64,000 nt of DNA, from positions 62,001-126,000 of the IMG/VR virus record IMGVR_UViG_3300020473_000011; one strand, written 5' to 3'. The notes under the pieces are model-generated. The model saw only the letters and a list, made by a program, of their open reading frames with translations, did not search any database and had not been told where the DNA came from. A program made the translations under genes and the position numbers. Below, one piece after another: positions 2,418 through 46,532 of the stretch (positions are counted from its first letter, which is position 1; each line of letters starts with the position of its first letter).

Positions 2418-3983
2418 ATGGCACGCGCACTAGACCTAGCTAAATTCGATGGCAAGATTAAAACGGTGTTGCTATCCGTATCGGGTGGCCGTACGTCACA
2501 CTACATGATCCGCTACTTCTTAGATAACCGTGAAGACGTAGCTCGCCGAATGGGCATCAATGAAAGTGAGCTTGAGTACATCTTTGTATTTGCGAATACA
2601 GGACTTGAGCACGATGATACCCTTCGCTTTGTTCGAGATACTGAGAAGTACTTCGGTATCAAAATCGTATGGGTTGAGGGCGTGCCTGTCTTTGGCGAGC
2701 GTACGGCGACACAGCACCGTATCGTTAACTACGACACTGCCTACCGTCTTGACCAGTACAAAGACGAGAACCACCCTTATACTGCGCACGTGCGTCGTTA
2801 TGGCGTACCTACGATTAGCAAAGTTAACTGCACACGTGAAATGAAGCGTAACGCTATCAATAGTTATATGAAGTCAATCGGCCATGATGAGAAGACGACA
2901 TTTATCACGGCAATCGGCATCCGTTTTGACGAAGAACGCCGCTGTGCAAATAAGCCCGAAGAGCGCAACCTTGTTTACCCAATGGCTCACTGGGTACCAA
3001 CCGTTGAAAAACAAGTCCTTGATTTTTGGAGCCAGTACGAATGGGATCTAAAAATACCGCGCTGGCTAGGTAACTGTGTACATTGCTATGAGAAAGCCGA
3101 CAGTGTTTTAGAACGTGCATATCTAGACTACCCTACAGCCTTTGAGATCGTGGACTACTATGAGAAGACCTATGCAGGTATAGGCTACGAGTTTACGGTT
3201 TACGACGACGCTGAGCCGCGAGCGACCTTCCGTGGTAATGAATATGCAGCTGACATGATTGCGCGCTTTAAGGTGGCACAAGACGACCGCACAGCGCGCG
3301 GTATTCCACTAGAAAATATCAAAGAACACCGTGAGATTTTGGCCGAAGAAAGACGCCTAGCCCGTACGCATATCAACACAGCGCTGAAAGCCTACAACAA
3401 GACGAGCGTGGGCAACCCATTAGCAGCTGCATGGTTTTTCGATAACTGGGATAACTTGAAGTCTGACAGCTTGTATAACGTATGTGAACGCATACTAACA
3501 GAAGTGACCCACCAGCAAAAAATCGGGATTGTTCAAAAGGGTCTAGCGCGTGTTATTGAAGAGTCTGGCCAAGCCTTTATGGTACGTACCCAAAAGCCGA
3601 AGAAGCCCGTTAAGATTGAAGAGTTTAAACCAAAGAAAGCGGCTAATAAGGTGGTTGCAGGCACACGCGCACTACTTGACGGCACGGCACACTTGTCAGT
3701 AGAAGAGGTAATTAAGTTAGTCGCAAAGTTCGCGTACAGGGACTATGCTGACCAACTGACGTACACGAGTGAAGAGCAGCTAGTGGCTACCCTTATCAGT
3801 TATGCGCCTGACATGAACGTACCGACGCCTCAGCGAACAGCGCTACTGATGTATGACATCCTTGCGGCAGTTGACGGTATTCGTGTTATGGATGTCGACG
3901 AGAGCTTACGCAGTGATGTGGCGGTGGCCATGACGAGAATCATGGATGAGGAAGCCTACGAGGACTTGAAAGACGTGGCTTAA
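2418..3983 (+). CDS. PAPS reductase-family (PP-loop) protein with C-terminal extension
   Basis: SVSGGRTS PP-loop, FANTGLEH, CTREMK, GIRFDE, GNCVHC motifs typical of phage PAPS-reductase-like proteins. Confidence 0.8.
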   Translation: MARALDLAKFDGKIKTVLLSVSGGRTSHYMIRYFLDNREDVARRMGINESELEYIFVFANTGLEHDDTLRFVRDTEKYFGIKIVWVEGVPVFGERTATQHRIVNYDTAYRLDQYKDENHPYTAHVRRYGVPTISKVNCTREMKRNAINSYMKSIGHDEKTTFITAIGIRFDEERRCANKPEERNLVYPMAHWVPTVEKQVLDFWSQYEWDLKIPRWLGNCVHCYEKADSVLERAYLDYPTAFEIVDYYEKTYAGIGYEFTVYDDAEPRATFRGNEYAADMIARFKVAQDDRTARGIPLENIKEHREILAEERRLARTHINTALKAYNKTSVGNPLAAAWFFDNWDNLKSDSLYNVCERILTEVTHQQKIGIVQKGLARVIEESGQAFMVRTQKPKKPVKIEEFKPKKAANKVVAGTRALLDGTAHLSVEEVIKLVAKFAYRDYADQLTYTSEEQLVATLISYAPDMNVPTPQRTALLMYDILAAVDGIRVMDVDESLRSDVAVAMTRIMDEEAYEDLKDVA

Positions 3984-4024: not shown

Positions 4025-5590
4025 TTAGGTAGCATCATCCGTTATTAACCCAACGTACTGCAATGAGTGGTACCGCGATTCACTTGAGCCTTGGAACACT
4101 ACCCTAAAGAGGTTTGTACGCGGTGCAGGTGAACTGAACATTACCTCTAATATATCCTGCTGAGCAGCGTAGCCGACTACCTCATGGTAAACCCATGGAC
4201 TACTATCTGTAAGACCACTAGGGTCATCGGGAGACTTTGTGTAGAGTGTAACCCTGCGCCCCCATTTATGAGCTGGTCCACCGTTAGCAATACGCAACCC
4301 TTTAACTGTAACCTTCTCAGCTGTCTTAAAGCTTAAATTAGAATATGAAGCCTTTACTTGCGCCCACTGACCAGTGTTATTGGTAAACATCGTCATCGCG
4401 GTAGCCCCCTCGTAGAAGGCCGTCGCATTAGTCTCGGCCGCGAGGATGAAAGGTTTATCGTCTTGTTTAAAGCTCCGTGCGTCACCTAGTGCGAGAGGTT
4501 CCGTACTGGCAAGACTGCTATCTGACGGCGTATAGATGACTAGGTCACCGTAATTCTGTGCTGGGTCGTCTCTACGCCCATGGATAAAGGCACTGGTAAG
4601 GTGGTCAGAAAAGTGAGTAACCATCGCAGGGTCATATAAGTGCGAAGACTCGAAGGGCTGACCTTCTGTAGCATCTTCGAGCATTGATTGTTTAAAGCCA
4701 TTTGAGTGACCTACCCAGTGTGGCACAGCTATGTGTTTAAAATAATAGGTGAGGTTAACGTCACCTGATTCGCTGCTGTTGATAAGGCTATCAACATCAT
4801 CTGGGCACTCAATGGTGACAAGCACAACTGATGGGCAATGACGGGTAACCGTCATACTACTCAAATCGTCGAACCTTATGGGGTTCATGTCGGTGCTCGT
4901 GGGTATTGTAGCAGGAACAACATCGTGTCCATAGGTATTGGCTTGGAACTGCGCTACAGGGAAGCCTACGCGTCGGAGTGAGAGTGCCCCAGCCTTCCCA
5001 TCAGCTGAGATAATGTGCTGAGTGCCTAGTAGGTCTTTGATGGGGAAGCTACGGGCTTGATAGAGCAGGTTTTCTGCTTGGGCATCCCAGCTTGCTTCTT
5101 CATCGACAGGAATAAGCTCACGTCCTTTGTAGTGTGCAGTATAGACGTTGGTCGAGCTATGGCCATACGGCAAGCCGTAGGTCAAACGGTAGGCTTCCGA
5201 AATCACATTAAAGAGGCTGCTACTACGGAAGTTAGTACCCATCACACCAAGGCTAGGATAATCACTTAGATTAAAACCATAGGTTCTTAAATCCTGTAGG
5301 TTAACGGGCTGGTCTACTAATTTATCTTCGGTCTCGAAGACAGCTAACTCACTTAGGTGCATATCTGAAATGGTGCAGACACTGGTATGTCTAGCATTAT
5401 CATTTAGTGTGTCGAGCGAAGTGGTCGTGGGGGCGTAGTAAGCAAGACTCATCAAGCCCTGTAAAACAAAATGCTTGTATTGCTTACCCTCGGGGGCTTT
5501 ACCCACCAGCTCGGAGTGGTGACTTAGTCTTTCTTCGATGTAGTCACAACGCTTGTTAAGTAGCGCAGTGGCAGTATTAAACGTAGTCAT
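4025..5590 (-). CDS. putative virion fibre/adhesin-like protein, paralog of 5653-7257
   Basis: long identical blocks with neighbour (HYKGRELIPVD, QAENLLYQARSFPIKDLLG); beta-rich C-terminal domain resembling a discoidin/CBM fold (inference). Confidence 0.6.
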   Translation of the reverse strand: MTTFNTATALLNKRCDYIEERLSHHSELVGKAPEGKQYKHFVLQGLMSLAYYAPTTTSLDTLNDNARHTSVCTISDMHLSELAVFETEDKLVDQPVNLQDLRTYGFNLSDYPSLGVMGTNFRSSSLFNVISEAYRLTYGLPYGHSSTNVYTAHYKGRELIPVDEEASWDAQAENLLYQARSFPIKDLLGTQHIISADGKAGALSLRRVGFPVAQFQANTYGHDVVPATIPTSTDMNPIRFDDLSSMTVTRHCPSVVLVTIECPDDVDSLINSSESGDVNLTYYFKHIAVPHWVGHSNGFKQSMLEDATEGQPFESSHLYDPAMVTHFSDHLTSAFIHGRRDDPAQNYGDLVIYTPSDSSLASTEPLALGDARSFKQDDKPFILAAETNATAFYEGATAMTMFTNNTGQWAQVKASYSNLSFKTAEKVTVKGLRIANGGPAHKWGRRVTLYTKSPDDPSGLTDSSPWVYHEVVGYAAQQDILEVMFSSPAPRTNLFRVVFQGSSESRYHSLQYVGLITDDAT

Positions 5591-5652
5591 AGTCTCAATT
5601 TTCCTTAGTTAAGTAGTACGAGGCTGCACTTAGGCCGCCCCGTGCAACAAGA

Positions 5653-7257
5653 TTAAACAGCATCTTCTGGCGTGTCACTAGCAGTGATAAACGCAACGTG
5701 CTGCATAGAGGTGTAACCGCCCTCGTCTGAATCCGTGAACTCTACATAAAAAATATTTGTAGAGGGGGCTGCCTTGCTAAAGAATACATCCACAGCGGCT
5801 GTTGTTGGTGAGAAGCTGATACTCTCGTGCAACTCCCAGTTACCATCAAGTGAAGCGCCGTTAGGATGGTCGGCTGGCTTTGTGTAGAGGCTGACAGTTC
5901 TTCCGTACTTACGTGATGGACCACCGTTGGCGATGGTCAATCCGCGTACAGTGAACTGCTCCTTAGTCACAAATCGGCTGTGAATAGAACCCCCACTTTT
6001 TTGCATCCATTGGGTGGGGTTATCTGTAAATACTGTCCACTGAGTCGCGCCGCCATACCGCGCACTGGCGTTATAGGCAGCTGCTGCCACCTTGCCCTCA
6101 AGGCTTTGATGGTAAGTATACTGCTTGTTCTGCATAAAACTCCTCGCATCACCTAATGCAAGTGGTTCAGTGCTAGCAAGACTGTCGTCTGACGGTGTGA
6201 AGATGATTAGGTCACCGTGGGCATTACCATTGTCGTTATCAATGTCCCCGATTGACGCACTAGTCAACACATCAGCGAAGTGCGATACCATCGAGGGGTC
6301 GTAAAGGCGCGATTGCGAAAGTGGTTTACCTTCTTCCCCTTCACCGTTATTTTTATGGTCGAAGATATTAGCCAAACCCACCCAGTGAGGCACCATGATG
6401 TGCTTAAAGTAGTAAGTTAGTGCTACATCGTCAGTTCCCTCGCCTGCTATCAACTCGTCTAGGTTATCAGGGCACTCAATGGTGACAAGGATAATTGACG
6501 GGCAGTGACGCACAACGATAGGCCACGCCATGTCATCAAGAGGGCGAATAGCATCGGCAGGTGAATGGTAGACTGAGTGAGGACTAACATTCTTACCTTC
6601 TGGGTCACCTTGGAACTGTGGCACAGGGAATCCCGCTCGACGTAGCGAGAAAGCACCCGCCTTACCATCGTCAGCAATTATATGCTGGGCACCGAGCAGG
6701 TCTTTTATAGGGAAACTACGGGCTTGATAAAGCAGGTTTTCTGCTTGGACATCCCAGCTTGCTTCTGCATCGACAGGTATAAGTTCACGACCCTTGTAGT
6801 GTGACGTCATGTGCTCGTCTAGGGTGTAATTCGGCGTCATGCCGTAGGTACTATCGTAGGCATTCATGATCGGGGCGTACAATGCACTTAGGCGCATTGT
6901 CTGACCAAGGCCGTCATTGCTTGGGTAGTTACTTAAATCCAAACCAAAATCGCGCAGCGTCTGTAGTTTAACGGGTTGGTCTACAAGCTTCTCTTCGGTC
7001 TCGAATACAGCCAGCTCACTTAGGTGCATATCTGAAATGGTGCTTACGCCTGCCGATTGGGCTGTCCCAGCGGGTGTCTGTAGCCCACGATGAACAGGTG
7101 AGTAGAATCCAGCATGCACTAATCCTTGCAGTACGAAGTGTTTGTACTGCTTTCCTGCGGGGGCTTTGCCGATTAGTTCAGAGTGAAGGCTTAGCTTTCC
7201 TTCGATGTAGTCACAACGCTTGTTAAGTAGCGCCGTGGCGGTATTAAACGTAGCCAT
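5653..7257 (-). CDS. putative virion fibre/adhesin-like protein, paralog of 4025-5590
   Basis: as above; identical leader AATTGAGACTATG. Confidence 0.6.
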   Translation of the reverse strand: MATFNTATALLNKRCDYIEGKLSLHSELIGKAPAGKQYKHFVLQGLVHAGFYSPVHRGLQTPAGTAQSAGVSTISDMHLSELAVFETEEKLVDQPVKLQTLRDFGLDLSNYPSNDGLGQTMRLSALYAPIMNAYDSTYGMTPNYTLDEHMTSHYKGRELIPVDAEASWDVQAENLLYQARSFPIKDLLGAQHIIADDGKAGAFSLRRAGFPVPQFQGDPEGKNVSPHSVYHSPADAIRPLDDMAWPIVVRHCPSIILVTIECPDNLDELIAGEGTDDVALTYYFKHIMVPHWVGLANIFDHKNNGEGEEGKPLSQSRLYDPSMVSHFADVLTSASIGDIDNDNGNAHGDLIIFTPSDDSLASTEPLALGDARSFMQNKQYTYHQSLEGKVAAAAYNASARYGGATQWTVFTDNPTQWMQKSGGSIHSRFVTKEQFTVRGLTIANGGPSRKYGRTVSLYTKPADHPNGASLDGNWELHESISFSPTTAAVDVFFSKAAPSTNIFYVEFTDSDEGGYTSMQHVAFITASDTPEDAV

Positions 7258-7279
7258 AGTCTCAATTTTTCCTTATCCA

Positions 7280-7840
7280 TTAGCGTAAGACGCGAAATGG
7301 AATTTCAAGTTGATTGTTTTCGATGTACAACGGGCGGCCTAGCTTCCATTGGTCAAGGGCTTCAAACTCGATGTCAGCACCGCTTTGGTAGGTACCGACT
7401 GTGCCCACTATATAGGTGTATGGCACCTTCCTTGGGTAAGACGATGCTTGACCCTTTTCTTCTAACCCCATGTAGGTATCTAAGTCCGAGATAACTACGG
7501 CAAATGTACGTAGGGTGCCCTCGTCACTGGCCTGCCTTTTGTCTATCGCGGCATAAAGCGCCTCATTTTTATCGGCTGAGATAACTAGGGCTAAGTTGCC
7601 ACTCTCACTGACAGAAAGCCTATCCAAAAATGTCCCTCTGTTAGGTGATAGTGTCTGGTTACCTGAGAACATGTTTATGTAATCCGAACGCGTGTAGGTC
7701 TTATTTTCCAGCCGCGCTAAGACGTCTTCGGGTGAGTCCGTTGAGAAGAACAAAACGGGAAAATGGCCATGAGCCGTTGCGGCCATAGCGCCAGCCTCTG
7801 AGGCAAAACGCGGGTTTACCCAGCGTAGTTCGTCACTCAT
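7280..7840 (-). CDS. putative virion structural protein (GTVG..SGAD family)
   Basis: IVGTVGTYQSGADIEF motif shared with cluster paralogs; AGGAG RBS. Confidence 0.6.
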   Translation of the reverse strand: MSDELRWVNPRFASEAGAMAATAHGHFPVLFFSTDSPEDVLARLENKTYTRSDYINMFSGNQTLSPNRGTFLDRLSVSESGNLALVISADKNEALYAAIDKRQASDEGTLRTFAVVISDLDTYMGLEEKGQASSYPRKVPYTYIVGTVGTYQSGADIEFEALDQWKLGRPLYIENNQLEIPFRVLR

Positions 7841-7849
7841 AGTGTCTCC

Positions 7850-8437
7850 TTAAATTGGCAGTGTAAGCATTGAGAAGTCGCGAGACTTGGGTAATTCACC
7901 CAGTGCTAGCGCGCGTTTTAGGGTGACCATCCCTGTTGTCTGGTCACCCGTTAAATGAGCAACCTGCCCCACTAGATCTATCTGGGTGACGTCATCACTT
8001 ACGCCGTCGATTATACCAGTACCTGTTGCGGCGGTACCCGTGACAACAAACCATGTAGGTGTGTAGTCCTCTTCGGCTATAGGGGAATTAATAGTGCTCA
8101 CTAGTTTCCCTAGCTTTAGGTTCGTTGTGATCGACCATTCCATGTTATCGTGGTCGACATAGCGGATGAAGGCACTTGCAACATGCAACGGGTCGCTTGT
8201 TGTGTCTGCCATCTGGGACAGCGTATTACCCGTATTTGAGGTTAATACACGGCTCGTCTTGAACGTTGCCACCCAGTCGTCAGCACGACCCGATAGCAGA
8301 TTACTCAGCTCTTCCACTGGGCTTCCCTGATTAAGCTGAGGTCGGTCACCACGAAAGAAAACGATGTGTTTATTACGCGCGAAGTCAGAGGCAGCAACGT
8401 GTGTCTGTAACAGCAAGTTAACATTATTAAAGTACAT
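7850..8437 (-). CDS. putative virion structural protein (same family)
   Basis: IVFFRGDRP and PTWF motifs shared with 11513 and 18045. Confidence 0.6.
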   Translation of the reverse strand: MYFNNVNLLLQTHVAASDFARNKHIVFFRGDRPQLNQGSPVEELSNLLSGRADDWVATFKTSRVLTSNTGNTLSQMADTTSDPLHVASAFIRYVDHDNMEWSITTNLKLGKLVSTINSPIAEEDYTPTWFVVTGTAATGTGIIDGVSDDVTQIDLVGQVAHLTGDQTTGMVTLKRALALGELPKSRDFSMLTLPI

Positions 8438-8454
8438 AAAGAAACGCCCCTAAG

Positions 8455-9366
8455 TTAGAATTGGAAAATATAGTCTTGGTCTATCGACGTGACGGAAAGA
8501 CGCCTATGCTCTTGCTTCAAGCGTAACGTTGGCATACCCACTCGACGGCTGTGGCCATCACCTGCTGTGGCTTGATCACCTGTATAAAACATGGTTGGTT
8601 TAGCACGCGCCGCAACGAAGAAGTCGGGTACCACACTACTCGGATCAAGGTTGACGGTCATGACACTGTCATCCGTTTCAGCGACCGACCTGTACTGACT
8701 TAGGTCATCCTTTTCAAGCAATGCGTGGTCAGGCAGCGTCGCCTTTAACAGGTAGACGTCATCATTGTACTCGTTTGACGGAGTCAACGCGTTCGGCGTG
8801 ATACTGGCCATGTGATGGTCAAGCTGCATACGAGTGTAGTGATACCCGACTGTCAGTAGGGTCGCATCGTCTTTGTTAGCCGCATTATAATTAAGGCGTA
8901 GTCCAACAGGTTTGAAACCAGCTGTATCAATAGCACTTAATGTGGTATTTGCCTCATTTGGGGTTAACCTTAGTGAGCTTGACGACCAATTAGCCGCAGA
9001 CGTTGAGTTTGGGGCTGGTAACGAGGTTTCACCCAAAAGCGCTGCAATGAAGTGAGCGCTGTATGACGTACGTGTCATACTGGCATCTGTGCCAAAATCG
9101 TAGGCACTCAAATCATACGTTCCCACCAATGGTGAAGAGAGCTTTACGTTTTCCACATTAGACACGACTGTGCTGATAGTCTGTTTCTTTTCAGCGAGGT
9201 CATCTGTCAAAACGGTGATGCTTGGTTCGACTATAAATTGGTCGTTAATGCGCGGCTGTTCGGGCGTAAAGCGCACCCAGTGACTCGCTTGCTTTGCTGT
9301 GGGTTTAGCAACACCATCCCACACAGCACGAAGCGACATGCCGCGTCGTTTAATTACTACGTGCAT
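8455..9366 (-). CDS. putative virion structural protein
   Basis: in operon, S/T-rich beta composition, PDFFVA segment. Confidence 0.55.
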   Translation of the reverse strand: MHVVIKRRGMSLRAVWDGVAKPTAKQASHWVRFTPEQPRINDQFIVEPSITVLTDDLAEKKQTISTVVSNVENVKLSSPLVGTYDLSAYDFGTDASMTRTSYSAHFIAALLGETSLPAPNSTSAANWSSSSLRLTPNEANTTLSAIDTAGFKPVGLRLNYNAANKDDATLLTVGYHYTRMQLDHHMASITPNALTPSNEYNDDVYLLKATLPDHALLEKDDLSQYRSVAETDDSVMTVNLDPSSVVPDFFVAARAKPTMFYTGDQATAGDGHSRRVGMPTLRLKQEHRRLSVTSIDQDYIFQF

Positions 9367-10007
9367 TAGTTAGCCCCCTTGTAAGCCTTGGTTCTAAGCT
9401 CTTCTAAAAAGGTGGTTATGCCGTCGTAGCTCACATCAAAGCTACCATCCAGCATTAACTCTGAGTTTTTAATAATGCGTGTTGCGTCTGAGTAAGGCGC
9501 GATAAAGACCGTGTTGTGATCCATCAAATCGGAAAACGTGTCTTGTACAAGCATTAGCATAAAGACCTCACCCTCTTCGGGTGTATAATCCGAGAGCGCG
9601 AGCATGCGGTCGCTGTGTGTCCAGCCTGCCACACCATTATCAACCATCAGCTCAAAGCTACCAAAGCTGACCGAGCATGATTTCGCCGATTGGTTAAATT
9701 GAGGGTCTTGTAGCATTCCCCGATAGGCTTGCGTAAGCCTTGTACAGCCGATATTTGCTAGCGTCTCGTCAAGGTCTGCATCGGTAGACAGGCTGTAGGT
9801 TCTTACGGGAAGCGGTTGACCCGCAATCAGATAGGCAACGACGTGCTTACTCGCATCAACTTGTGTGAAATCAACGGGTTGACCTGCTACGCTGGCCACG
9901 TCCTTACGGGCGGCCGCTTGCGCTGAGTTGTACTTTGGACTATAGCGCCTGCGTCCAATTGAGGGCAGCATGTAGGCACCTGATAGGGGCTGTTTTCCTA
10001 TTATCAT
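9366..10007 (-). CDS. hypothetical/structural protein
   Basis: ATG 10007 (MIIGKQP) follows GAGGA RBS just after upstream stop; removes overlap in ORF track. Confidence 0.6.
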   Translation of the reverse strand: MIIGKQPLSGAYMLPSIGRRRYSPKYNSAQAAARKDVASVAGQPVDFTQVDASKHVVAYLIAGQPLPVRTYSLSTDADLDETLANIGCTRLTQAYRGMLQDPQFNQSAKSCSVSFGSFELMVDNGVAGWTHSDRMLALSDYTPEEGEVFMLMLVQDTFSDLMDHNTVFIAPYSDATRIIKNSELMLDGSFDVSYDGITTFLEELRTKAYKGAN

Positions 10008-10020
10008 ATCGTAGTCCTCA

Positions 10021-10692
10021 TTATGTTGTAATTGGGAAATCCGATGCAACTTTGACCAAGGCATCGGGTAATGTCGTGTTACATAGCCCTGTCGTAAAGC
10101 CATAGTTTCTGGGCGTAATTGCCATGGGCTGTGCGACACTGCCGTAGCGTTCGTCATCAAGCTTAAAGTCAATAAATGCAGGCTGCGAGCCGTCGTAGTT
10201 TGCTTCTAACGTACCTTGCATAAAGTTCTTAACGGGTGCCATTGTCCAGACGTGATGAAGAGAACCCTCAACGTCACCTTCGGCTTCGCTGATCCAAAGC
10301 AGTGTTCCTCGGTTCTTGTGTGCTAGCTGGTCGGCCACTCCTGTCTTACCATTTATCTGCATCGAAAGAATGGAACCACTTAGGTCGCTGACATAGTAGA
10401 CATGCCCCAACTTCTCGGTGTTCCGTCTTGCCGATTGAGTGAAACCCCAGTGTCCATTCGAGACCTTAGCAGGCATCAATAGATTTGCGATATGACCTAC
10501 ATACGTCAGCTCATTGATGCGAGAGACGTCTAAAGCATCAGGCGACGCTTGCCATACGGGCTGGCCGTCGGCGGGTCTCACGAGCAGCGTATTAAGCACC
10601 ACGTCGGGGTCTTCATCAAAGACAAGTACCTTCGTCTCAACCGTCCTAAAGGCTGTATTAAGTCCAAACTCGGTTGGTACATACCAAAGCAT
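10021..10692 (-). CDS. hypothetical/structural protein
   Basis: AGGAG RBS, in operon. Confidence 0.65.
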   Translation of the reverse strand: MLWYVPTEFGLNTAFRTVETKVLVFDEDPDVVLNTLLVRPADGQPVWQASPDALDVSRINELTYVGHIANLLMPAKVSNGHWGFTQSARRNTEKLGHVYYVSDLSGSILSMQINGKTGVADQLAHKNRGTLLWISEAEGDVEGSLHHVWTMAPVKNFMQGTLEANYDGSQPAFIDFKLDDERYGSVAQPMAITPRNYGFTTGLCNTTLPDALVKVASDFPITT

Positions 10693-10723
10693 GTGTTCGT
10701 ACTCCTAGTTGATATAGGGAAAT

Positions 10724-10747
10724 AAAGGGGCATAAGCTGCCCCTTTT
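10724..10747. terminator. intrinsic terminator inside structural cluster
   Basis: AAAGGGGCA-TAAGC-TGCCCCTTTT hairpin. Confidence 0.7.
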
Positions 10748-10756
10748 AACTAAGGG

Positions 10757-11500
10757 TTAAGCAAAAGCGATGGCTTCTTTGTCAGCAATCTCTTGCAAAG
10801 ACTTACCAAAGCTTGGCATGGCGGCTAGGCGAGCTTCCATCGCGTCTCGCATGGTTGACCAGTCGTGGTACATGTTCATAAAAAACATGTTGATGTAGCC
10901 ATCAGCCAGTTGTACAACAGATTCACTCTTGTCAACAGCTGTTGAGGTTAAGCGTACGGGCTGGTTCGTCGTAGTATCACCAATACCTAATTGAAGATGC
11001 TTAATTTCCTCTGGAAGGGCTGCCACATCAAATGGCGCAGTACCATCCCAAAGCTCAACCTCCCACGTGCTTATATCGGCTGTCGACCGCGTAGCATGTG
11101 TATCAACAATAAGATACGCTTTTGTGGCGGTTCCCGTGTTTCGGATGTCCGCCGTAAACTGCTCAGCGGGTGTAAAACGGAAGGCTGGGACAGTCGGGCA
11201 CAAGTTGCGCAGTGCATCGAGGTCTGTGTGGTATGATTCTATGTTACCAGCGTCGTGACGGAAGTAGCGGCTTTGGATAGCAAACTCATCGTTATCCATG
11301 TAGGCCAGATCCCATTTTGTCATACCCACAAGGGACAGAAGAATATTATTCGCCTCATCGGTAACCACAAGCATTGCAGGCTTGTTTTCCAAGTAGCGCG
11401 TTGGCTCGTTTGCAGGGTCGGTTTGCAAGAAGGCAAGCTGAGTGTCTTGCGTTTGCTTTTCTGACATGTAACTAATAAGTGGGTGAATATATACAGCCAT
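10757..11500 (-). CDS. putative virion structural protein, paralog of 12383-13231
   Basis: GTATKAYLIVD / LGIGD / VRL pattern matches GEVDKVYVLID / LPVGT / VQL of 12383. Confidence 0.6.
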   Translation of the reverse strand: MAVYIHPLISYMSEKQTQDTQLAFLQTDPANEPTRYLENKPAMLVVTDEANNILLSLVGMTKWDLAYMDNDEFAIQSRYFRHDAGNIESYHTDLDALRNLCPTVPAFRFTPAEQFTADIRNTGTATKAYLIVDTHATRSTADISTWEVELWDGTAPFDVAALPEEIKHLQLGIGDTTTNQPVRLTSTAVDKSESVVQLADGYINMFFMNMYHDWSTMRDAMEARLAAMPSFGKSLQEIADKEAIAFA

Positions 11501-11512
11501 GACAAGGTCTCC

Positions 11513-12301
11513 TTAAACGATATTACATTTGATGCGCAGTGATACGGGTGCCACCTGATCAGTGATTTGGTCGTGCCCCTTTGATAGCTCTAAGTCGGCA
11601 CCCGAACCCACACCACCGACTGTCCCGATCACAATTGGCTGGCGGTCTACATAAGCCTCGGGGCGCATAATAGCTAATGTGGCTTGATACTCATTGTTTT
11701 GTGTCGGGTGGTCAATGACATGGTCTGATGCGTGTATGGCGCTTGGTGACCCCGTGATAGCGAACCATGTGGGTCTGTCCTCTACGAGCTGGCCAGCGGC
11801 GCTGTAAGCCTGTAGGTTGGAGAACTTTGAACTCTTATATAACCACGCAGCCTTACTGGCGCTGAATGACCAATCGAGCATCCACGACAAGTCACTATTT
11901 GGGTTGCGTGGCACGGGTGGGAAGGTTTCACTCGTAGCCGACACAGCACCCTCGTGCATCTCTGCGCCATTTGCGAGTGCTGACACCCCTACGGCATAAG
12001 AGTACGAATCGTCGTCACCACTCGTGGTCAGACGAAAGTAACCAATACGGCGTTCATCTAAAGGGAGCGGAGCAAGGTCACTTGTTAGTGTGTCGCCACG
12101 GTTGTCAAAATACATACCGTAGTAAAATTCCTCGGGTGACGGCATGCGGCCTGTAAATAAGTGGATGTGCCAACCACGAGAGGCATTTCCGTTAGTTTTT
12201 TGGTTGGTCGGCGCATAAAATGCAGGTGAACCCCAGCGCTGCGCAATCATTTGAAGCGCTTCGGCTGGTAAGAGTGTATTCATGTCGTAAGTGTCTGCCA
12301 T
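11513..12301 (-). CDS. putative virion structural protein (FTG..P / GTVG..GSGADL family)
   Basis: IHLFTGRMPSPEE, PTWFAI, GTVGGVGSGADLEL. Confidence 0.65.
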   Translation of the reverse strand: MADTYDMNTLLPAEALQMIAQRWGSPAFYAPTNQKTNGNASRGWHIHLFTGRMPSPEEFYYGMYFDNRGDTLTSDLAPLPLDERRIGYFRLTTSGDDDSYSYAVGVSALANGAEMHEGAVSATSETFPPVPRNPNSDLSWMLDWSFSASKAAWLYKSSKFSNLQAYSAAGQLVEDRPTWFAITGSPSAIHASDHVIDHPTQNNEYQATLAIMRPEAYVDRQPIVIGTVGGVGSGADLELSKGHDQITDQVAPVSLRIKCNIV

Positions 12302-12382
12302 GATATAACCTTGTAAGTTTTTCTAAAAGTGATTAGTAGGCACCAAGTGGCACCTACCGCAATTATGTCGGGTCACAAACTA

Positions 12383-13231
12383 CTAGCTGTGGTTAACGAT
12401 GTTGTAGCCACGTTCAGTAGCGAGCGCCGTCATAGCGTTCATCAACTCAGTCTCACTCTCGGGGGTCATAACAGGCATCACAACGCGTATTGCGTCCTGT
12501 ATAATCAATCGGCTTTCATTTTGCAGATTGGACTCTGATAATTGTACAACATCGTCACCCAACGTGCCTACAGGAAGTTGTAGCCAACGCACATCAAGCG
12601 AGGCATCGCCTTCCTTTATTTGCTCAGGTGTTGCGGTTGCAAGCAGCTGCGGGTCAGGTGCATTAGGCAAGCGCTGTTGTAGTGGGTCTTCGTCAATCAA
12701 TACATAAACTTTGTCGACTTCACCTGAGCCAACCAGTGTCGAATGATAGATAACCTCACCGCTATCGAGCACACCCGCAGGGTCAGGGATCACATCTATA
12801 ACCAGCGTCAGCTTAGGGGCTGATAAGACAAAGCCACCAGCACCACTGGCACTACCAACGTTCATATCAAGATAGGGTTGGCTGAATTTACCAGCGCCAA
12901 GCCCTCGCAAACGCCCAAAGTAGCGCAGAGTGTGCGGTGTTACCGCAGGGTCGCTGTCGCGGCCAACATGGCCATTTTGTATTGAGACAGAGACACGCGG
13001 TGTCATGAGAAGTTGGCCAGCTGCATCATAGGCCAGCAAGCGCCCATAACCAAGAGTGCTCGTTATCTCGGTGTTATTGTTAAAACCTAGGTTGCCATCG
13101 CCCTTACCTGCTAAGTAAGAGATATTGGTATTCAGTGTCAGGGTCTTTGCTTGCGACGCCTCACGTACGATGCGCTGAGATTCTTTATTCGCCTCTAGCG
13201 TATAGTGTTGAATGTACTTAGATTCACTCAT
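12383..13231 (-). CDS. putative virion structural protein
   Basis: paralogous segments with 10757-11500. Confidence 0.6.
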   Translation of the reverse strand: MSESKYIQHYTLEANKESQRIVREASQAKTLTLNTNISYLAGKGDGNLGFNNNTEITSTLGYGRLLAYDAAGQLLMTPRVSVSIQNGHVGRDSDPAVTPHTLRYFGRLRGLGAGKFSQPYLDMNVGSASGAGGFVLSAPKLTLVIDVIPDPAGVLDSGEVIYHSTLVGSGEVDKVYVLIDEDPLQQRLPNAPDPQLLATATPEQIKEGDASLDVRWLQLPVGTLGDDVVQLSESNLQNESRLIIQDAIRVVMPVMTPESETELMNAMTALATERGYNIVNHS

Positions 13232-13235
13232 GTGT

Positions 13236-14006
13236 TTAAGATCCTAATTTTGGTATATTGATACGGCCGATTTCGACCGAGCTTGGGTACATGAAAGTCT
13301 TACCCCTATAGGGGTCAAGAATGACCCATTGTTCTCCTAGCCATATATCGGCCTCCGACCCGTAGGTGCCTACCGTCAGTGGGATGCCACCACGAAAGTC
13401 AAAGAGAAGGTAGTCAGCGGGGTAGGATGCTGAATACAACCCTGTGACCTCGCCGTCACCAAACCAACTGCGCAGTCGTGGGTTAAATGCACTTTTACGA
13501 GCCAGTACTGCCCACTTGTAAGGTGCAACGACCCATGCGTTAGCGTCGTCGGTACCACAGCACGTGAACGGGCTGTCATAGCGTATACTTGTCTTGTGCA
13601 TCTTGACGTCAGAGGCAGGTACGAGGCACAGCGTCGAGCTGCCATCATGGCCACTAGACACACCGTTCAGCTGACTAATTTTCTCGAAGTCTTCTAACCA
13701 CTCAGCACTAAGCAGTGTTGCTGCGTCGGTAAACCCCATGAACTCAGTACCGTAATAGTAGCGCGACCATGTGCCCGTATTTTTTCGTTCCGAATAAGCA
13801 TTGGGCGCAATCGGAAGAGAAGCAGGGTCAATAAGCTGAACACCGTACTTACACTCTGTTTCTGATGGCGGCTCGGAGTACATGAAGAACAGTGCCAAGT
13901 CGTCATCAGCCAAGGCATCTTTAAGCCACTTTCGAAGAGACGTGTTAGGGCTTAGACTCGTTACGAAGTCCTGTGATACCCCAATTAGCTCGGCCACATT
14001 TGACAT
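13236..14006 (-). CDS. putative virion structural protein, duplicate of 14008-14778
   Basis: same length (256 aa), near-identical scaffold, TVGTYGSEAD motif. Confidence 0.7.
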   Translation of the reverse strand: MSNVAELIGVSQDFVTSLSPNTSLRKWLKDALADDDLALFFMYSEPPSETECKYGVQLIDPASLPIAPNAYSERKNTGTWSRYYYGTEFMGFTDAATLLSAEWLEDFEKISQLNGVSSGHDGSSTLCLVPASDVKMHKTSIRYDSPFTCCGTDDANAWVVAPYKWAVLARKSAFNPRLRSWFGDGEVTGLYSASYPADYLLFDFRGGIPLTVGTYGSEADIWLGEQWVILDPYRGKTFMYPSSVEIGRINIPKLGS

Positions 14007-14007
14007 A

Positions 14008-14778
14008 CTACGATCCTACTTTTGGTATATGTACGCGGCCTATTTCGACCGAACTTGGATAGACGTATGCACCACCTCTTGGGAATGACCGAAAATGGTC
14101 AAGGTGCTCACCCAGCCAGACGTCAGCCTCCGACCCGTAGGTGCCCACGGTTAGTGGGATGCCACCACGAAAGTCAAAGAGAAGGTAGTCAGCGGGGTAG
14201 TTCGTCCCTTTACTGTGCGGTTGTTCGCCGTCACCAAACCAGCTGCGCAGTCGCGGGTTAAATGCACTTTTACGAGCAAGAACCGCCCACTTAAAGGCAC
14301 CTCGTTTATTCGCGTTCGAGTAATAGGTTCCGCAGCGTGTGTAACTGTTGCTGTAGCGCACACCTGTCTTGTGCATCTTGACGTCAGCCGATGGCACGAG
14401 ACACATCGTCGAGCTGCCATCGTGTTCAAGGGACGCACCGTTCAGTTGATTAATTTTCTCGAAGTCTTCTAACCATTCAGCACTAAGCAGTGTTGCCGCG
14501 TCGTTAAATCCCATGTACTCAGTACCACTGTACCACGGGGAAAAGCGGCCACCCCTCCATGAGTGATAGGCATTTACAGGCAGTGGTAATGCTTTAGGGT
14601 CAATAAGCTGTACGCCATACTTACACTCAGTTTCTGATGGTGGGTCTGTGTACATAAAGAACAACGCTAAGTCATCATTAGCTAATGCCTCTTTAAGCCA
14701 CGTGCGAAGAGACGCTTTAGGGTTTAGACTCGTTAAAAAGTCTTGTGAAGCCCCAATAGGGGCTGCATTAAGTGACAT
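14008..14778 (-). CDS. putative virion structural protein, duplicate of 13236-14006
   Basis: as above. Confidence 0.7.
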   Translation of the reverse strand: MSLNAAPIGASQDFLTSLNPKASLRTWLKEALANDDLALFFMYTDPPSETECKYGVQLIDPKALPLPVNAYHSWRGGRFSPWYSGTEYMGFNDAATLLSAEWLEDFEKINQLNGASLEHDGSSTMCLVPSADVKMHKTGVRYSNSYTRCGTYYSNANKRGAFKWAVLARKSAFNPRLRSWFGDGEQPHSKGTNYPADYLLFDFRGGIPLTVGTYGSEADVWLGEHLDHFRSFPRGGAYVYPSSVEIGRVHIPKVGS

Positions 14779-14792
14779 AGGAATCTCGCTCT

Positions 14793-15488
14793 TTAGGTTG
14801 TGCTATAACTGACTTGTTTGAATTGGCCTCGGTAGACATCCCCGTCGGCTGGATAACGTTGGCTCTCACAAAAGAGCGCCGTTGCATCAAAGTTCATATC
14901 AGTGAACTCAAGCATGCTCGCCACGTTAGCAGGATCGACGACAAAGCGTATATCGGGATTTGGTGACCCCACCCAGCTTTCGGGTACATCGGGATCGCTC
15001 TTATAACGCGCTGCGATGCACACCCTCAAAATCGGATGTATCTCGTAGATGATGGACGTCGAGTTTGGATGCTGCCTACGGTAGGAAAACATTTCCCATG
15101 AACCTAACTTATACGTTGAGCTAGTGAACAGCGCATGCACTGTTGAGGTTGTAATCCACCCCATTAGGTCAATTGACAAGTTTGCACCCTCTCGTTTGAT
15201 AATATCAGTGAGTGGGTCGATGTGGCTTTGGTCAGCAAATGGGTCAAAGGCTTCCCGCACTTCTTCCATGGGGATAATGTGAAAATTAATGTACGACAAT
15301 TCCGTAAGTTTTACGGGCTTGCCATTGCGCAGGTCTTCATGATGTATCAGTGGCTTTGTCGAAATAAGGTCTATGTCACTCTTTGTACCAGCCATCAATC
15401 CTGTTCCCAAGTAACCTTGCTGGTATGAACGATCATAGGCAAACTGGTTGCCGACGCGTCGCATTAATTCTGGGCTGTAAACGGCCAT
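14793..15488 (-). CDS. hypothetical/structural protein
   Basis: AGGAG RBS, in operon. Confidence 0.65.
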   Translation of the reverse strand: MAVYSPELMRRVGNQFAYDRSYQQGYLGTGLMAGTKSDIDLISTKPLIHHEDLRNGKPVKLTELSYINFHIIPMEEVREAFDPFADQSHIDPLTDIIKREGANLSIDLMGWITTSTVHALFTSSTYKLGSWEMFSYRRQHPNSTSIIYEIHPILRVCIAARYKSDPDVPESWVGSPNPDIRFVVDPANVASMLEFTDMNFDATALFCESQRYPADGDVYRGQFKQVSYSTT

Positions 15489-15500
15489 AACGAGACTCCT

Positions 15501-16088
15501 TTAAAGTACAGGGCTATAAACGTTTAGAACAGGCAGCTCAGGGTCGGCCGTGGTCAGTGTCGCGTCGTGCACCACAATTTCGGCATTACTGTCAAAGATT
15601 GTCCCGATAGTGTGCATCACATAGATTGCACGCGAGGAATCGGCTGTACCTGACCACAGCGTTAAAGCCCATGTCACCGTCTGGTCACCCAACGTCGTGT
15701 GGTCAAACCCTTGTACAACGGTAGCCTGTTGTGGTTCACCAAAGAGTGCGACGGGCGCTGTGTAATTTGAAGTGACGCCGTCAATGTCATCATTCAGGTC
15801 ACTCGTTAACGTAATTGTTTGGTCATGGTTCGACCATGACATTGACTTTAGAAAATCAGGGCAGTAGCCCACGAGCTGGCCATTATAGCTTGATAGTTCA
15901 TCCGTTGGTGCCAACGGCGACCCCGTAGGATTTGTCCATTCAGCATCGAGTACACTTGTTAGCTGTGCAAGTGTTGGGGCTGCTCCCGTAAAGAAGTAGG
16001 TCGTTTGTGTCGCTATGTCGTCTGAGCGCTCAAACACATTTTTTAAGTAGGTCAATAAGCTTGTGCGATAGGCTTTTGAAAATTGCAT
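15501..16088 (-). CDS. putative virion structural protein (same family)
   Basis: YFFTGAAPT, VTWAL, HTIGT..AEIVV. Confidence 0.6.
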   Translation of the reverse strand: MQFSKAYRTSLLTYLKNVFERSDDIATQTTYFFTGAAPTLAQLTSVLDAEWTNPTGSPLAPTDELSSYNGQLVGYCPDFLKSMSWSNHDQTITLTSDLNDDIDGVTSNYTAPVALFGEPQQATVVQGFDHTTLGDQTVTWALTLWSGTADSSRAIYVMHTIGTIFDSNAEIVVHDATLTTADPELPVLNVYSPVL

Positions 16089-16145
16089 TTTAGAGTCTCC
16101 AAGAGGGCAATGCTGCCCTCGTTAAAAGAAAGGATTAAGGTCTTT

Positions 16146-18041
<1,896 letters not shown>

Positions 18042-18044
18042 GGA

Positions 18045-18896
18045 TTAAGCTCCTTGTAGCATAATAGGCGCAGTTTTCGTTTTGGGCATCACGTACTTTA
18101 AGCGATGGATCCGAATCTTTCGGGGAGCTTCGGTTTGGCCTGACTCAGCCCCTTTATGCAAAACTAAGTTTGCTGTTGGCTCTTCGTGAATATCACCGAC
18201 CGTCAGGAAATAGTTACTTTCTGGCCGTACGGCCATCGCTGACAGCTTAATAGACTTACCATCACGGCGCGTGAACTCTTTGGGCACAAACCCTGTTGCG
18301 TCATGCGATATAAAGGTCGTGTATGACGTTTGGTGACCCCATGGGTACATCAGCGCCCATGTCGGAGCCGCACCATTACCCAGCTGCTGTATTTCGTCTG
18401 AGGGTTCAGCACCGTAGCTAACAGCTGCAAAGATTTCATTCCTTTTAAACTTATGATGGCGTACGGCATAACCATCTGTATCAACAAAGTCATCAGGGTT
18501 AACAGGTCTAAACTTGTTGGCCATAACATCTAAGCCATTAGGTGCACGCCCTTCAAGCGCAAAGGGGCTTTCTGTCGCCAGCTCAACATAGTCAGTTGCC
18601 TTGATATTAAAAAGCCCGCAAACGTGGTCGGATGGGCGACTACCATTAAAGAAGTAGATACCGTTCTCAACTTCTTCGGCTGAGGGTCTACGACCCGTGA
18701 ACAAGCAGATTGAATAGTTTTGGTACCCTTCAACCATATTACGCGTAATACCTTCGCGTATGCCTGCTTCTAGTCGTTCTTGCGACCCGAGGCTCATGTG
18801 TTCGAGCGTTAATTTGGGGGTATTTGGTTCGAGTGCCATTGCGGCAACCTCCGTCGTTAAACATGTAGTTAAACATTGGGTTATTGGCTCAGACAC
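18045..18896 (-). CDS. putative virion structural protein (same family); start uncertain
   Basis: ICLFTGRRPSAEE, PTWAL, LTVGD..ANLVL. Confidence 0.6.
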   Translation of the reverse strand: MSEPITQCLTTCLTTEVAAMALEPNTPKLTLEHMSLGSQERLEAGIREGITRNMVEGYQNYSICLFTGRRPSAEEVENGIYFFNGSRPSDHVCGLFNIKATDYVELATESPFALEGRAPNGLDVMANKFRPVNPDDFVDTDGYAVRHHKFKRNEIFAAVSYGAEPSDEIQQLGNGAAPTWALMYPWGHQTSYTTFISHDATGFVPKEFTRRDGKSIKLSAMAVRPESNYFLTVGDIHEEPTANLVLHKGAESGQTEAPRKIRIHRLKYVMPKTKTAPIMLQGA

Positions 18897-29359: not shown

Positions 29360-29399
29360 AAAGGGCACCTCCAATAATCAATAGTCTGTGGGAAGCGCC

Positions 29400-45136: not shown

Positions 45137-45762
45137 ACTAAAGGTTCCTCATCGTTTTTTAATTGTGCTGCAATCTCAGGATGCAGGCACTGTGCTTTTG
45201 ATTCTAGGATAATACTATCAGGCCGCGTACGGAGCTGGTGACTACGCACAAGCTCAGCCTGCCGATGTTCAATCATGTTAGCTTGGCACTGAATCATTTT
45301 AGTGAGTGTCTGCTCAACAGTTAGCGCACCGAGGCTGTACTCGGTGAGTAAGGCACTGATGATTGGGTGCGTCTTGGCCAGCTCAATAATAGCGGGATCA
45401 AAGACATCGTCAACGCGTTTAGGGTGACTATCGCCCTCTCGGTTAAAATACGTTTTAACGAGGCTAACAAGGTATGCCGCCGTCGGGGTCTTTATCTCTG
45501 TGTTGCGGCCATGGTCTCGATACACGGTCGCATACGGCACAAAGTGAAACTGTCTAATGCAGATTTGACTGCGCTTATCGGCAACCGCCAAGCAAACATG
45601 GTCACCGTCGTCTATCGTACAGCTAACCTCAAGCTGTGGGCATGTCTTAACCAGTATTTCGGCGGCTTCATCGAAGATGAGCTTTAGCGCCCCTAAGCTA
45701 ACAAACTCACCGACACGCTTATACTGGCGCTGTAGTTGTGGGTGTATATCGTTCTTATCCAC
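45133..45762 (-). CDS. hypothetical protein
   Basis: operon ORF. Confidence 0.7.
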   Translation of the reverse strand: MDKNDIHPQLQRQYKRVGEFVSLGALKLIFDEAAEILVKTCPQLEVSCTIDDGDHVCLAVADKRSQICIRQFHFVPYATVYRDHGRNTEIKTPTAAYLVSLVKTYFNREGDSHPKRVDDVFDPAIIELAKTHPIISALLTEYSLGALTVEQTLTKMIQCQANMIEHRQAELVRSHQLRTRPDSIILESKAQCLHPEIAAQLKNDEEPLV

Positions 45763-46522: not shown

Positions 46523-46532
46523 TAGCGGCTCC

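What the first reader, a model, noticed from the sequence alone, without database searches (positions are those of the whole stretch)
13236..14778. Duplicate pair with constant scaffold and four hypervariable aromatic-rich loops
Seen: two 256 aa proteins nearly identical over long blocks but unrelated in four short segments (AYSERKNTGTWSRYYY vs AYHSWRGGRFSPWYS; DSPFTCCGTDDANAWVVAPY vs SNSYTRCGTYYSNANKRGAF; EVTGLYSAS vs EQPHSKGTN; QWVILDPYRGKTFM vs HLDHFRSFPRGGAYV). Inference: CDR-like ligand-binding loops on one face under diversifying selection, i.e. alternative receptor-binding tips. Conserved blocks would allow recombination to swap loops between copies.
Basis: partly seen in the sequence, partly recalled or inferred. 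Interest (0 to 1): 0.6.

Follow-up and report, generated by a model that had tools for sequence, protein, structure and literature searches.

The report
Megaphage twin proteins with swappable loops
Two neighbouring genes of an uncultured marine giant phage encode the same new protein scaffold with four very different tyrosine-rich loops, are predicted to dock on one conserved partner protein, and are visibly reshuffled by recombination between phage strains, which fits an exchangeable binding (probably host-recognition) subunit whose target is unknown.

Summary
Genes A (14008-14778, -) and B (13236-14006, -) encode 256-aa proteins that are 83% identical in the scaffold and 23% identical in the four quoted segments. 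The same four segments vary in eight independent homologue pairs.

The window lies in a 282-kb fragment of a ~416-kb marine myovirus. The family is tiny (12 clusters among 1.8 billion representatives) and has no Pfam, PHROG, PDB-sequence or convincing fold match, although the model is confident (pLDDT 85.8).

New findings:
- Gene B is an exact chimera of copies 2 and 3 of a sister phage's three-copy array, with the crossover at 13807-13832.
- Copy number ranges from 1 to 3, and both the two-copy and three-copy forms occur in independent metagenomes.
- Scaffolds are homogenised within a genome, whereas loop types are old.
- The gene is always followed by a conserved ~280-aa gene. A modelled complex supports binding (ipSAE 0.74, best control 0.00), uses the conserved blocks and leaves the variable cores out.
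- There is no sign of a DGR.

Not shown:
- Positive selection. Both substitution classes are saturated in the loops.
- Co-location of the four loops. No model coordinates were available.
- Any ligand or presence in the virion.

The best reading is a gp38-like modular binding subunit from a new family. Its receptor-binding role is inferred.

The parts
14008..14778 (-). Gene A. First copy of the 256-aa scaffold-plus-loops protein.
   Evidence: ORF. It is 96% identical to copy 1 of the sister phage. AF2 model has pLDDT 85.8 and pTM 0.84.
13236..14006 (-). Gene B. Second copy, and a natural chimera. Its 5' ~174-200 nt match copy 2 and the rest matches copy 3 of the sister phage's three-copy array.
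   Evidence: All 39 informative sites are copy-2-like up to gene nt 174, all 228 are copy-3-like from nt 201, and none is discordant.
13807..13832 (-). Crossover interval of the copy-2/copy-3 recombination. It lies in the conserved block just upstream of V1.
   Evidence: A contig from an independent study (X5, record 16, 13601-14387) spans it.
14527..14571 (-). V1 of gene A (aa 70-84). Loop between strands 69-74 and 91-96.
14293..14352 (-). V2 of gene A (aa 143-162). The variable core is aa 151-160.
14200..14226 (-). V3 of gene A (aa 185-193). Short hairpin.
14062..14106 (-). V4 of gene A (aa 225-239). Tip of the long C-terminal hairpin.
13752..13799 (-). V1 of gene B (aa 70-85).
13518..13577 (-). 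V2 of gene B (aa 144-163).
13425..13451 (-). V3 of gene B (aa 186-194).
13290..13331 (-). V4 of gene B (aa 226-239).
14539..14710 (-). Mosaic patch in gene A. All 31 nucleotide differences from the sister phage's copy 1 fall here, and the remaining 3' 531 nt are identical.
   Evidence: The same differences appear in metagenome contigs X2 and X6.
12383..13231 (-). Conserved 282-aa partner gene, always immediately downstream of the 256-aa gene(s).
   Evidence: Adjacency holds in the window and in L003, L005, L006, L007, L009, L011 and L013. In L005 the two-gene cassette is duplicated. The predicted complex has ipSAE 0.74 against 0.00 for the best control.
4025..18896 (-). Co-oriented module of 16 genes without known families that holds the pair. 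Its gene order is conserved in distant relatives.

Best explanation
Genes A and B are alternative versions of one binding subunit from a previously undescribed protein family of marine giant myoviruses.

**Architecture.** Each copy has a conserved core: the N-terminal helices, the KWAVLARKSAFNPRLRSW block and the DFRGGIPLTVG block. I infer that this core docks on the invariant 282-aa protein encoded just downstream. Four Tyr/Arg/His/Ser-rich loops lie outside that interface and are free to contact a variable ligand.

**Likely role.** The module also carries lectin-type domains and a second patchy duplicate pair. From this I infer that the heterodimer sits on the virion and contributes to host-surface recognition, so a phage with two or three copies displays two or three specificities. 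This step is not shown.

**How diversity arises.** It comes from homologous recombination in the conserved blocks, not from targeted mutation. Three processes are visible:
- unequal crossover changes copy number (1-3) and creates chimeras
- gene conversion keeps the scaffolds of co-resident copies alike
- old loop types persist and are re-assorted

**Shown:** the variable and conserved architecture, the recombinant, and the copy-number variation. **Modelled:** the fold and the heterodimer. **Inferred:** virion location and receptor binding.
For: - **Architecture.**
- **Rarity and novelty.** There are 12 clusters at 50% identity among 1.84 billion representatives. No Pfam, PHROG, PDB-sequence or phage-GenBank hit was found.
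- **Fold.** The model is confident, and the four segments fall on loops and hairpin tips with lower pLDDT.
- **Loop composition.** Tyr is 4x enriched.
- **Partner.**
  - The ~280-aa gene is adjacent in every context found. L005 has the arrangement [255][282][257][282].
  - The complex scores ipSAE 0.74, best of 3 controls 0.00. That mark was reached by 58 of 80 solved complexes and 2 of 110 mismatched pairs. The runs agree in at least 69% of contacts and the partner's pLDDT is at least 79.
  - Interface residues are the conserved ones (entropy 0.49 vs 1.09, p 6e-7). Only 2 of 43 hypervariable core residues touch (p 1.6e-5). A and B are 87% identical at the interface and 61% elsewhere.
- **Recombination.** Gene B is an exact chimera. 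The three-copy form occurs in X2 and X6, and the two-copy chimera occurs in the independent X5.
- **Concerted evolution.** Third-position identity of the A and B scaffolds is 0.72, against 0.39-0.49 to other alleles. Their loops are only 24% identical, yet A's V1 and V3 are 56-80% identical to L5_1 and P0005.
- **Scaffold selection.** dN/dS is 0.08-0.17.
- **Binding-type context.**
  - A relative's orthologue of the 186-aa module protein is fused to discoidin domains.
  - The mid-domain of the 631-aa protein weakly resembles ConA/LamG lectins.
  - The 534/521-aa pair is also patchy.
- **Possible expression.** RNA-library contigs identical to gene A exist, but DNA carry-over is not excluded.
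Against: - No homology or fold match links the pair, the partner or the module to any virion or tail-fibre protein. The best VIA Z is 3.9, far under the tool's stated noise level of 7-8, and the best Atlas TM is 0.32.
- The locus is about 115 kb from the sheath and gp25 genes. It lies next to HTH regulators and auxiliary genes.
- Positive selection cannot be demonstrated. pS in the loops (~0.8) is as saturated as pN.
- Co-location of the four loops could not be measured.
- The interface list contains only low-error contacts, so flexible loops may be missing from it for technical reasons.
- The complex used my own shallow alignments (9 and 22 rows).
- The partner alone folds poorly (pLDDT 54).
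- Only gene A was modelled with the partner, not gene B.
Confidence: 0.5

Rival explanations
1. The proteins are intracellular host-takeover or anti-defence binders. The variable loops would track variable host proteins, such as defence or surface-biogenesis factors, inside the infected cell. The 282-aa protein would be a cofactor.
For: The locus is far from the tail module. It lies beside HTH regulators and auxiliary genes. No structural-protein homology was found. Tandem variable paralogues are also typical of counter-defence loci (general knowledge).
Against: - The pair sits inside a tightly packed 16-gene co-oriented module whose order is conserved in distant phages.
- A relative's module proteins carry discoidin sugar-binding domains.
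- The large obligate-looking heterodimer interface (about 300 contacts) suits an assembly subunit better than a soluble inhibitor.
Confidence: 0.2
2. The protein is an ordinary structural subunit, for example a peripheral baseplate, 'garland' or decoration protein. Its four loops would be unconstrained surface, so the variability reflects relaxed constraint and drift rather than ligand recognition.
For: - Synonymous and non-synonymous differences are both saturated in the loops.
- The loops have lower pLDDT.
- The weak best structural rows are small phage tail, neck and fibre-complex chains: 9rkv_A Z 3.9, 8jou_a Z 3.0, 9c39_K Z 2.9 and 6hhk_B Z 2.1. 9RKV holds the tail fibres and garland protein of phage 7-7-1 (PMC12796354).
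Against: - Tyr, Arg and His enrichment is not what drift in free loops usually gives.
- Loop types V1 and V3 are kept at 56-80% identity across phages whose scaffolds are saturated at synonymous sites, so the loops are under constraint within a type.
- Several divergent copies are retained side by side, and copy number turns over.
- The structural Z scores are below noise.
Confidence: 0.2
3. A diversity-generating retroelement or another targeted mutator writes the variable segments.
For: The only support is the general picture of localised hypervariability on a constant scaffold.
Against: - No reverse transcriptase was found in the 282-kb record (the record is about 67% complete).
- No template-like repeat of any part of the array exists elsewhere in the record.
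- The differences affect all four bases and include indels, so they are not adenine-specific.
- The four separate segments span 500 nt.
- Loop types are stable across phages.
Confidence: 0.02
4. The protein is an enzyme, for example a sugar-modifying enzyme. The invariant E51, Q57, D202 and R204 would form an active site, and the loops would set substrate specificity.
For: The language-model feature search listed 'glycosyltransferase'-named clusters at 0.92-0.93. There is a strictly conserved DFRG motif.
Against: - Those Atlas hits share only 121-128 features, which is in the chance range by the tool's own statement.
- There is no Pfam or fold match to any enzyme.
- The conserved motifs lie in the predicted protein-protein interface.
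Confidence: 0.05

Closest known systems
gp38 adhesin of T2/T6-type (Straboviridae) phages
   Same: - It is a small protein (~250-260 aa) with four hypervariable segments set between conserved motifs that form the structural core.
- A conserved part attaches it to a partner encoded next door (the tail-fibre tip).
- The segments are exchanged by recombination (PMC3157838 abstract; PMC12032242 abstract).
- The present proteins share the four-segment layout, the adjacent predicted partner and the recombination.
   Different: - There is no sequence or family match.
- The conserved blocks are not glycine-rich motifs.
- The variable segments are spread over aa 70-239 rather than confined to a C-terminal domain.
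- The partner is a 282-aa protein of unknown fold, not a long fibre.
- The genes occur as tandem arrays of 1-3 copies.
- Virion location is unproven.
Alternative tail-fibre cassettes (phage Mu G segment S/U vs S'/U'; P2-type fibre plus chaperone pairs)
   Same: Two-gene units consisting of a specificity determinant and its partner are present in alternative versions within one genome (general knowledge). L005 carries [255][282][257][282].
   Different: There is no invertible segment or invertase here, and all copies are co-oriented and apparently co-expressed. In the window and in L003, two or three variable genes share a single partner gene.
DGR variable proteins (e.g. Bordetella phage Mtd, C-type-lectin fold)
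   Same: A constant scaffold displays localised hypervariable ligand-binding residues, often rich in Tyr (general knowledge).
   Different: There is no RT, no template repeat and no adenine-specific pattern, and indels are present. Diversity is allelic and recombinational, not generated anew in each generation.
Tandem multi-RBP arrays of large phages (e.g. CBA120 TSP1-4, hyperbranched fibres of jumbo phage phiKp24)
   Same: Several paralogous host-recognition proteins are encoded side by side to widen or alter specificity (general knowledge; phiKp24 is cited in PMC12796354, reference 52).
   Different: Those are large trimeric tailspikes or depolymerases with swapped whole domains. Here the units are 256-aa proteins that differ only in four short loops.

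Membership tests
T-even gp38 adhesin | Sequence membership (a family-model hit). | tested here: not met
   No Pfam or PHROG family at E <= 0.1 / 0.01. No PDB sequence hit with the family profile. No tblastn hit in 50,697 phage records.
T-even gp38 adhesin | Hypervariable segments separated by conserved glycine-rich motifs that form the core (PMC3157838). | tested here: not met
   Four variable segments are present. The intervening conserved blocks (e.g. KWAVLARKSAFNPRLRSW, LLFDFRGGIPLTVG) are not glycine-rich repeats.
T-even gp38 adhesin | Binds the tip of the tail fibre encoded next to it. | tested here: inconclusive
   A neighbouring conserved partner is predicted to bind (ipSAE 0.74, best control 0.00). 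That partner has no recognisable fibre features, and its own model is poor (pLDDT 54).
DGR variable protein | A reverse transcriptase in the element. | tested here: not met
   PF00078 finds nothing in the 281,557-nt record. The record is about 67% complete.
DGR variable protein | A template repeat nearly identical to the variable region, with differences at adenines. | tested here: not met
   blastn with word size 7 of the array against the genome finds only the two copies themselves. The substitutions involve all bases and include indels.
Tail-tube-fold superfamily (tube, terminator, completion, Dit-type proteins) | Significant structural similarity of the core. | tested here: not met
   Atlas rows for Phage_tube_2, Tail_completion_gp17 and Tail_tube give TM 0.26-0.31 by query and at most 0.49 by row. 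The best VIA Z is 3.9. Foldseek against PDB and BFVD gives nothing at E <= 0.001.
Discoidin / F5_F8_type_C lectin domain | A Pfam PF00754 match or the fold. | tested here: not met
   The 256-aa proteins have no hit. Discoidin occurs only in other module proteins of the relative L009.

The most novel reading that the evidence does not exclude
The 256-aa and 282-aa pair would be a new, structurally unprecedented class of heterodimeric phage adhesin. The surrounding conserved 16-gene module without known families would build a separate host-recognition organelle of marine megaphages. The module may be made largely of distant paralogues that share an N-terminal strand-PPSxEE motif and a C-terminal GTxGxxSGAD motif. 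Specificity would be re-programmed by cassette-like loop and copy exchange.
Probability: 0.3. Interest if true: 0.65.

Novelty: new variant of a known kind. Interest (0 to 1): 0.5.

Why it matters
Almost nothing is known about how uncultured marine giant phages recognise hosts, and their structural genes are largely unannotated. This locus offers three things:
- a compact, testable candidate specificity determinant with a predicted partner
- natural recombinants that show which boundaries tolerate exchange
- a confident model that matches no known fold

If binding is confirmed, it would add a second, unrelated example of the gp38-type design of conserved core plus interchangeable hypervariable segments. 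It would also give a handle for linking these phages, found in at least 10 seawater studies, to hosts.

Tried and rejected
- **Family and sequence searches.** Pfam and PHROG scans of the pair and 14 neighbours found nothing useful. A PDB sequence search with profiles of the 256-aa and 282-aa families and with the 631-aa and 534-aa proteins found nothing.
- **Phage GenBank.** blastn and tblastn with the region, gene A, the 282-aa and the 631-aa proteins gave no match. A viral contigs pattern scan found nothing.
- **Fold searches on the gene A model.** Foldseek PDB and BFVD, VIA wide, VIA second look and Atlas all stayed below noise. The recurring small tail, neck and fibre-complex chains are kept only as a lead.
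- **The 282-aa protein.** Its model was too poor (pLDDT 54) for its σ1-head-like rows (Z 4.0) to mean anything.
- **Atlas feature search.** The 'glycosyltransferase' label is in the chance range.
- **dN/dS in the loops.** Saturated and uninformative.
- **Paralogy of module proteins.** hhalign E-values of 0.0008-0.007 over short motifs, from 78 comparisons, and an HMM search of all genome ORFs (262-aa protein at E 1.1) do not reach significance.
- **Records behind L007 and L009.** They could not be searched because they are not held.
- **Co-location of the four loops.** Not tested, because the tools return no model coordinates.

Full report
**1. Observation**

The window holds two adjacent 256-aa ORFs on the minus strand, gene A at 14008-14778 and gene B at 13236-14006, separated by one base. 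An AGGA motif inside the end of A lies 9 nt before B's ATG.
- BLASTP gives 69% identity, E 1e-129.
- At the DNA level, blocks of near-identity alternate with stretches that do not align.
Identity is 23% inside them and 83% outside, Fisher p 3.6e-17.
- The segments were chosen on this pair, so I tested them on eight independent homologue pairs. Identity was 0.10-0.40 inside and 0.35-0.81 outside, all p < 1e-3.
- In 11 close homologues, entropy peaks at aa 72-84, 151-160, 186-191 and 226-239. A minor fifth patch lies at aa 115-118.
- In the 22-member family alignment, 61 of the 101 gap-containing columns fall in or within two residues of these four segments.
- The loops are tyrosine-rich (12.2% vs 3.0%) and enriched in His and Arg (about 2x) and more mildly in Thr and Ser. 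They are poor in Leu, Ile, Met and Lys. Trp and Phe are not enriched.

**2. What the sequence belongs to**

- The window is positions 62001-126000 of a 281,557-nt IMG/VR virus record estimated to be 67% complete.
- Near-identical proteins sit on contigs of 416-419 kb. NCBI files these under a MAG labelled Aestuariibacter sp..
- The record encodes a tail sheath at 211.9 kb and a gp25-type baseplate protein at 191.6 kb, so it is a giant myovirus.
- The pair lies at 75.2-76.8 kb, about 115 kb from those genes.
- It sits inside a block of 16 tightly packed co-oriented genes (window 4025-18896). None of the 12 scanned has a credible Pfam or PHROG match.
- The order of these genes is conserved in distant relatives L007, L009, L011, L013 and L014.
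- Contigs of the phage occur in seawater and marine metagenomes from 10 studies.

**3. Family and fold**

- The word search found 9 relatives.
- An exhaustive profile search of 1.84 billion representatives found only 12 clusters.
- An AF2 model built on the 22-sequence alignment is confident: pLDDT 85.8, pTM 0.84.
- The model has N-terminal helices followed by a mainly β core. V1 is the loop between strands 69-74 and 91-96. V2 runs from strand 136-140 through helix 153-158. V3 is a short hairpin at 186-195. V4 is the tip of the long hairpin 220-251. Each has locally lower pLDDT.
- No library gives a convincing match:
  - Foldseek against PDB and BFVD gives nothing at E <= 0.001.
  - The best VIA Z is 3.9 (9rkv_A), against a typical noise level of 7-8.
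  - Atlas TM is at most 0.32.
- The weak rows recur on small phage tail, neck and fibre-complex chains and on tail-tube or completion-type clusters. 9RKV contains the fibres and 'garland' protein of phage 7-7-1 (PMC12796354). I treat this only as a lead.

**4. Recombination, shown directly**

The sister phage (L003 and L004, two NCBI assemblies) has three copies where the window has two.
- Gene B is 100% identical to copy 2 over its first ~174-200 nt and 100% identical to copy 3 over the rest.
- All 39 informative sites up to gene nt 174 are copy-2-like, all 228 from nt 201 are copy-3-like, and none is discordant. This places one crossover at window 13807-13832, in the conserved block just before V1.
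- The simplest reading is an unequal crossover that deleted one unit. This direction is inferred.
- Metagenome contigs confirm both forms:
  - X2 and X6 carry the three-copy joint, 14779 to 13798 with 565 foreign letters between.
  - A contig from the independent study of X5 runs uninterrupted across 13601-14387, which is the chimera.
- Gene A differs from sister copy 1 at 31 sites, all within gene nt 69-240, and 17 of these are shared with copy 3. This suggests a conversion tract.
- Elsewhere the family is single-copy (L006, L007, L009, L011, L013) or occurs as a duplicated two-gene cassette [255][282][257][282] in L005.

**5. Mode of evolution**

- The scaffold is under purifying selection, with dN/dS 0.08-0.17.
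- In the loops both pN (~0.5) and pS (~0.8) are saturated, so positive selection cannot be demonstrated.
- The scaffolds of A and B share 72% of third positions, against 39-49% with other alleles. Their loops are only 24% identical.
- A's V1 and V3 are 56-80% identical to those of L5_1 and P0005, which come from phages whose scaffolds are synonymously saturated relative to A.
- This is the signature of concerted evolution of the scaffold with retention of old, constrained loop types. It is not the signature of hypermutation.
- A DGR is excluded as far as the data go. There is no RT, no template repeat and no adenine bias, and indels are present.

**6. Partner**

- A conserved ~280-aa gene follows the 256-aa gene or genes in every context found. 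It is 100% identical between the window and L003 and evenly conserved, without variable loops.
- The modelled complex of the 282-aa protein with gene A supports binding. ipSAE is 0.74 (runs 0.80, 0.74, 0.69) and the best of three controls is 0.00. The tool states that this mark was reached by 58 of 80 solved complexes and 2 of 110 mismatched pairs. Contacts agree at 69% or more, and the partner's pLDDT is at least 79. My own alignments were used, so these counts hold only roughly.
- The 77 interface residues on gene A are the conserved ones:
  - mean entropy 0.49 vs 1.09, p 6e-7
  - only 2 of 43 hypervariable-core residues, p 1.6e-5
  - A/B identity 87% at the interface vs 61% elsewhere
- The 282-aa protein alone folds poorly (pLDDT 54) and gains confidence in the complex (65-74).
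- Caveat: only low-error contacts are listed, which may under-represent flexible loops.

**7. Context hints for a binding function**

- The 186-aa module protein (7280-7840) corresponds to the N-terminal 200 aa of a 703-aa protein in L009. That protein ends in two discoidin (F5_F8_type_C) domains, E 2e-22.
- The Atlas's own low-confidence model of the 631-aa protein has a mid-domain resembling ConA/LamG-type lectin folds, TM 0.52-0.54 by row.
- The 534/521-aa tandem pair in the same module is also a mosaic of 80-95% and 15-40% identical patches.

**8. Interpretation**

The most likely reading (about 0.5) is a modular binding subunit that works like the gp38 adhesin of T2/T6-type phages. gp38 has a conserved part that attaches to a neighbouring partner and four hypervariable segments that set specificity and are exchanged by recombination (PMC3157838).
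- The present family is not a member of the gp38 family. It has no sequence match and no glycine-rich motifs.
- Virion location and receptor binding are inferred.
- The rivals are an intracellular host-takeover binder (0.2), a structural subunit with merely unconstrained loops (0.2), an enzyme (0.05) and a DGR target (0.02).

**9. Verdict**

- The recombination idea is confirmed and extended.
- Co-location on one face, diversifying selection and receptor binding remain untested.
- Novelty: a new variant of a known kind, meaning a gp38-style design in an unrelated family with no known fold and a predicted obligate partner.
- Interest: 0.5.

Noticed in passing
window 4025-5590 and 5653-7257 (-): This is a second tandem duplicate pair in the same module (521 and 534 aa, 56% identical). 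It has the same alternation of 80-95% identical blocks and 15-40% identical patches. The 534-aa copy is 100% identical to the sister phage's.
   Followed up: partly
window 7280-7840 (-); L009:8528-10639: The 186-aa module protein matches the N-terminal 200 aa of a 703-aa protein in a distant relative. That protein carries two C-terminal discoidin (F5_F8_type_C) domains. A separate 213-aa discoidin protein lies beside it.
   Followed up: partly
window 18045-18896, 15501-16088, 13236-14778, 11513-12301, 7850-8437, 7280-7840 (-): Several module proteins share a short N-terminal motif, a hydrophobic strand followed by P-[ST/P]-x-E-E (LALFFMYTDPPSETE, IHLFTGRMPSPEE, ICLFTGRRPSAEE, TYFFTGAAPT). Some also share a C-terminal [IV]GTxGxxxSGAD[IL] motif. 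They may be distant paralogues. Profile E-values were 0.0008-0.007 over short stretches and are not significant after multiple testing.
   Followed up: partly
window 12383-13231 and 10757-11500 (-): The C-terminal half of the 282-aa partner family aligns weakly with the C-terminal half of the 247-aa family (hhalign E 0.005, 114 columns).
   Followed up: no
window 16146-16200 (-), C-terminus of the 631-aa protein: The protein ends in a (Pro-Glu)n repeat, PPEPEPEPEPEPEPAT. Its mid-domain weakly resembles ConA/LamG lectin folds in the Atlas's own low-confidence model.
   Followed up: partly
window 27791-29374 (-): A 527-aa Na+/H+-exchanger (Kef-type) membrane protein with a TrkA-N domain is encoded in a phage record (Pfam E 3e-23 and 1e-16). 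This is an unusual auxiliary gene.
   Followed up: no
window 2418-3983 (+) and 45755-46597 (-): The first is a PAPS-reductase-like gene (phrog_424, E 8e-40). The second is a radical-SAM/Fe-S oxidoreductase-like gene (phrog_16999, E 2e-7).
   Followed up: no
window 9366-10172 (-): The listed 268-aa ORF (TTG start) overlaps the upstream gene by about 150 nt. The orthologues are 207-214 aa, so the true start is probably further in.
   Followed up: no
window 13601-13700: Run X5 holds a second short contig (101 nt) over this scaffold stretch of gene B, with 12 differences and 2 gaps. It may be a minor variant or another copy in that population.
   Followed up: no
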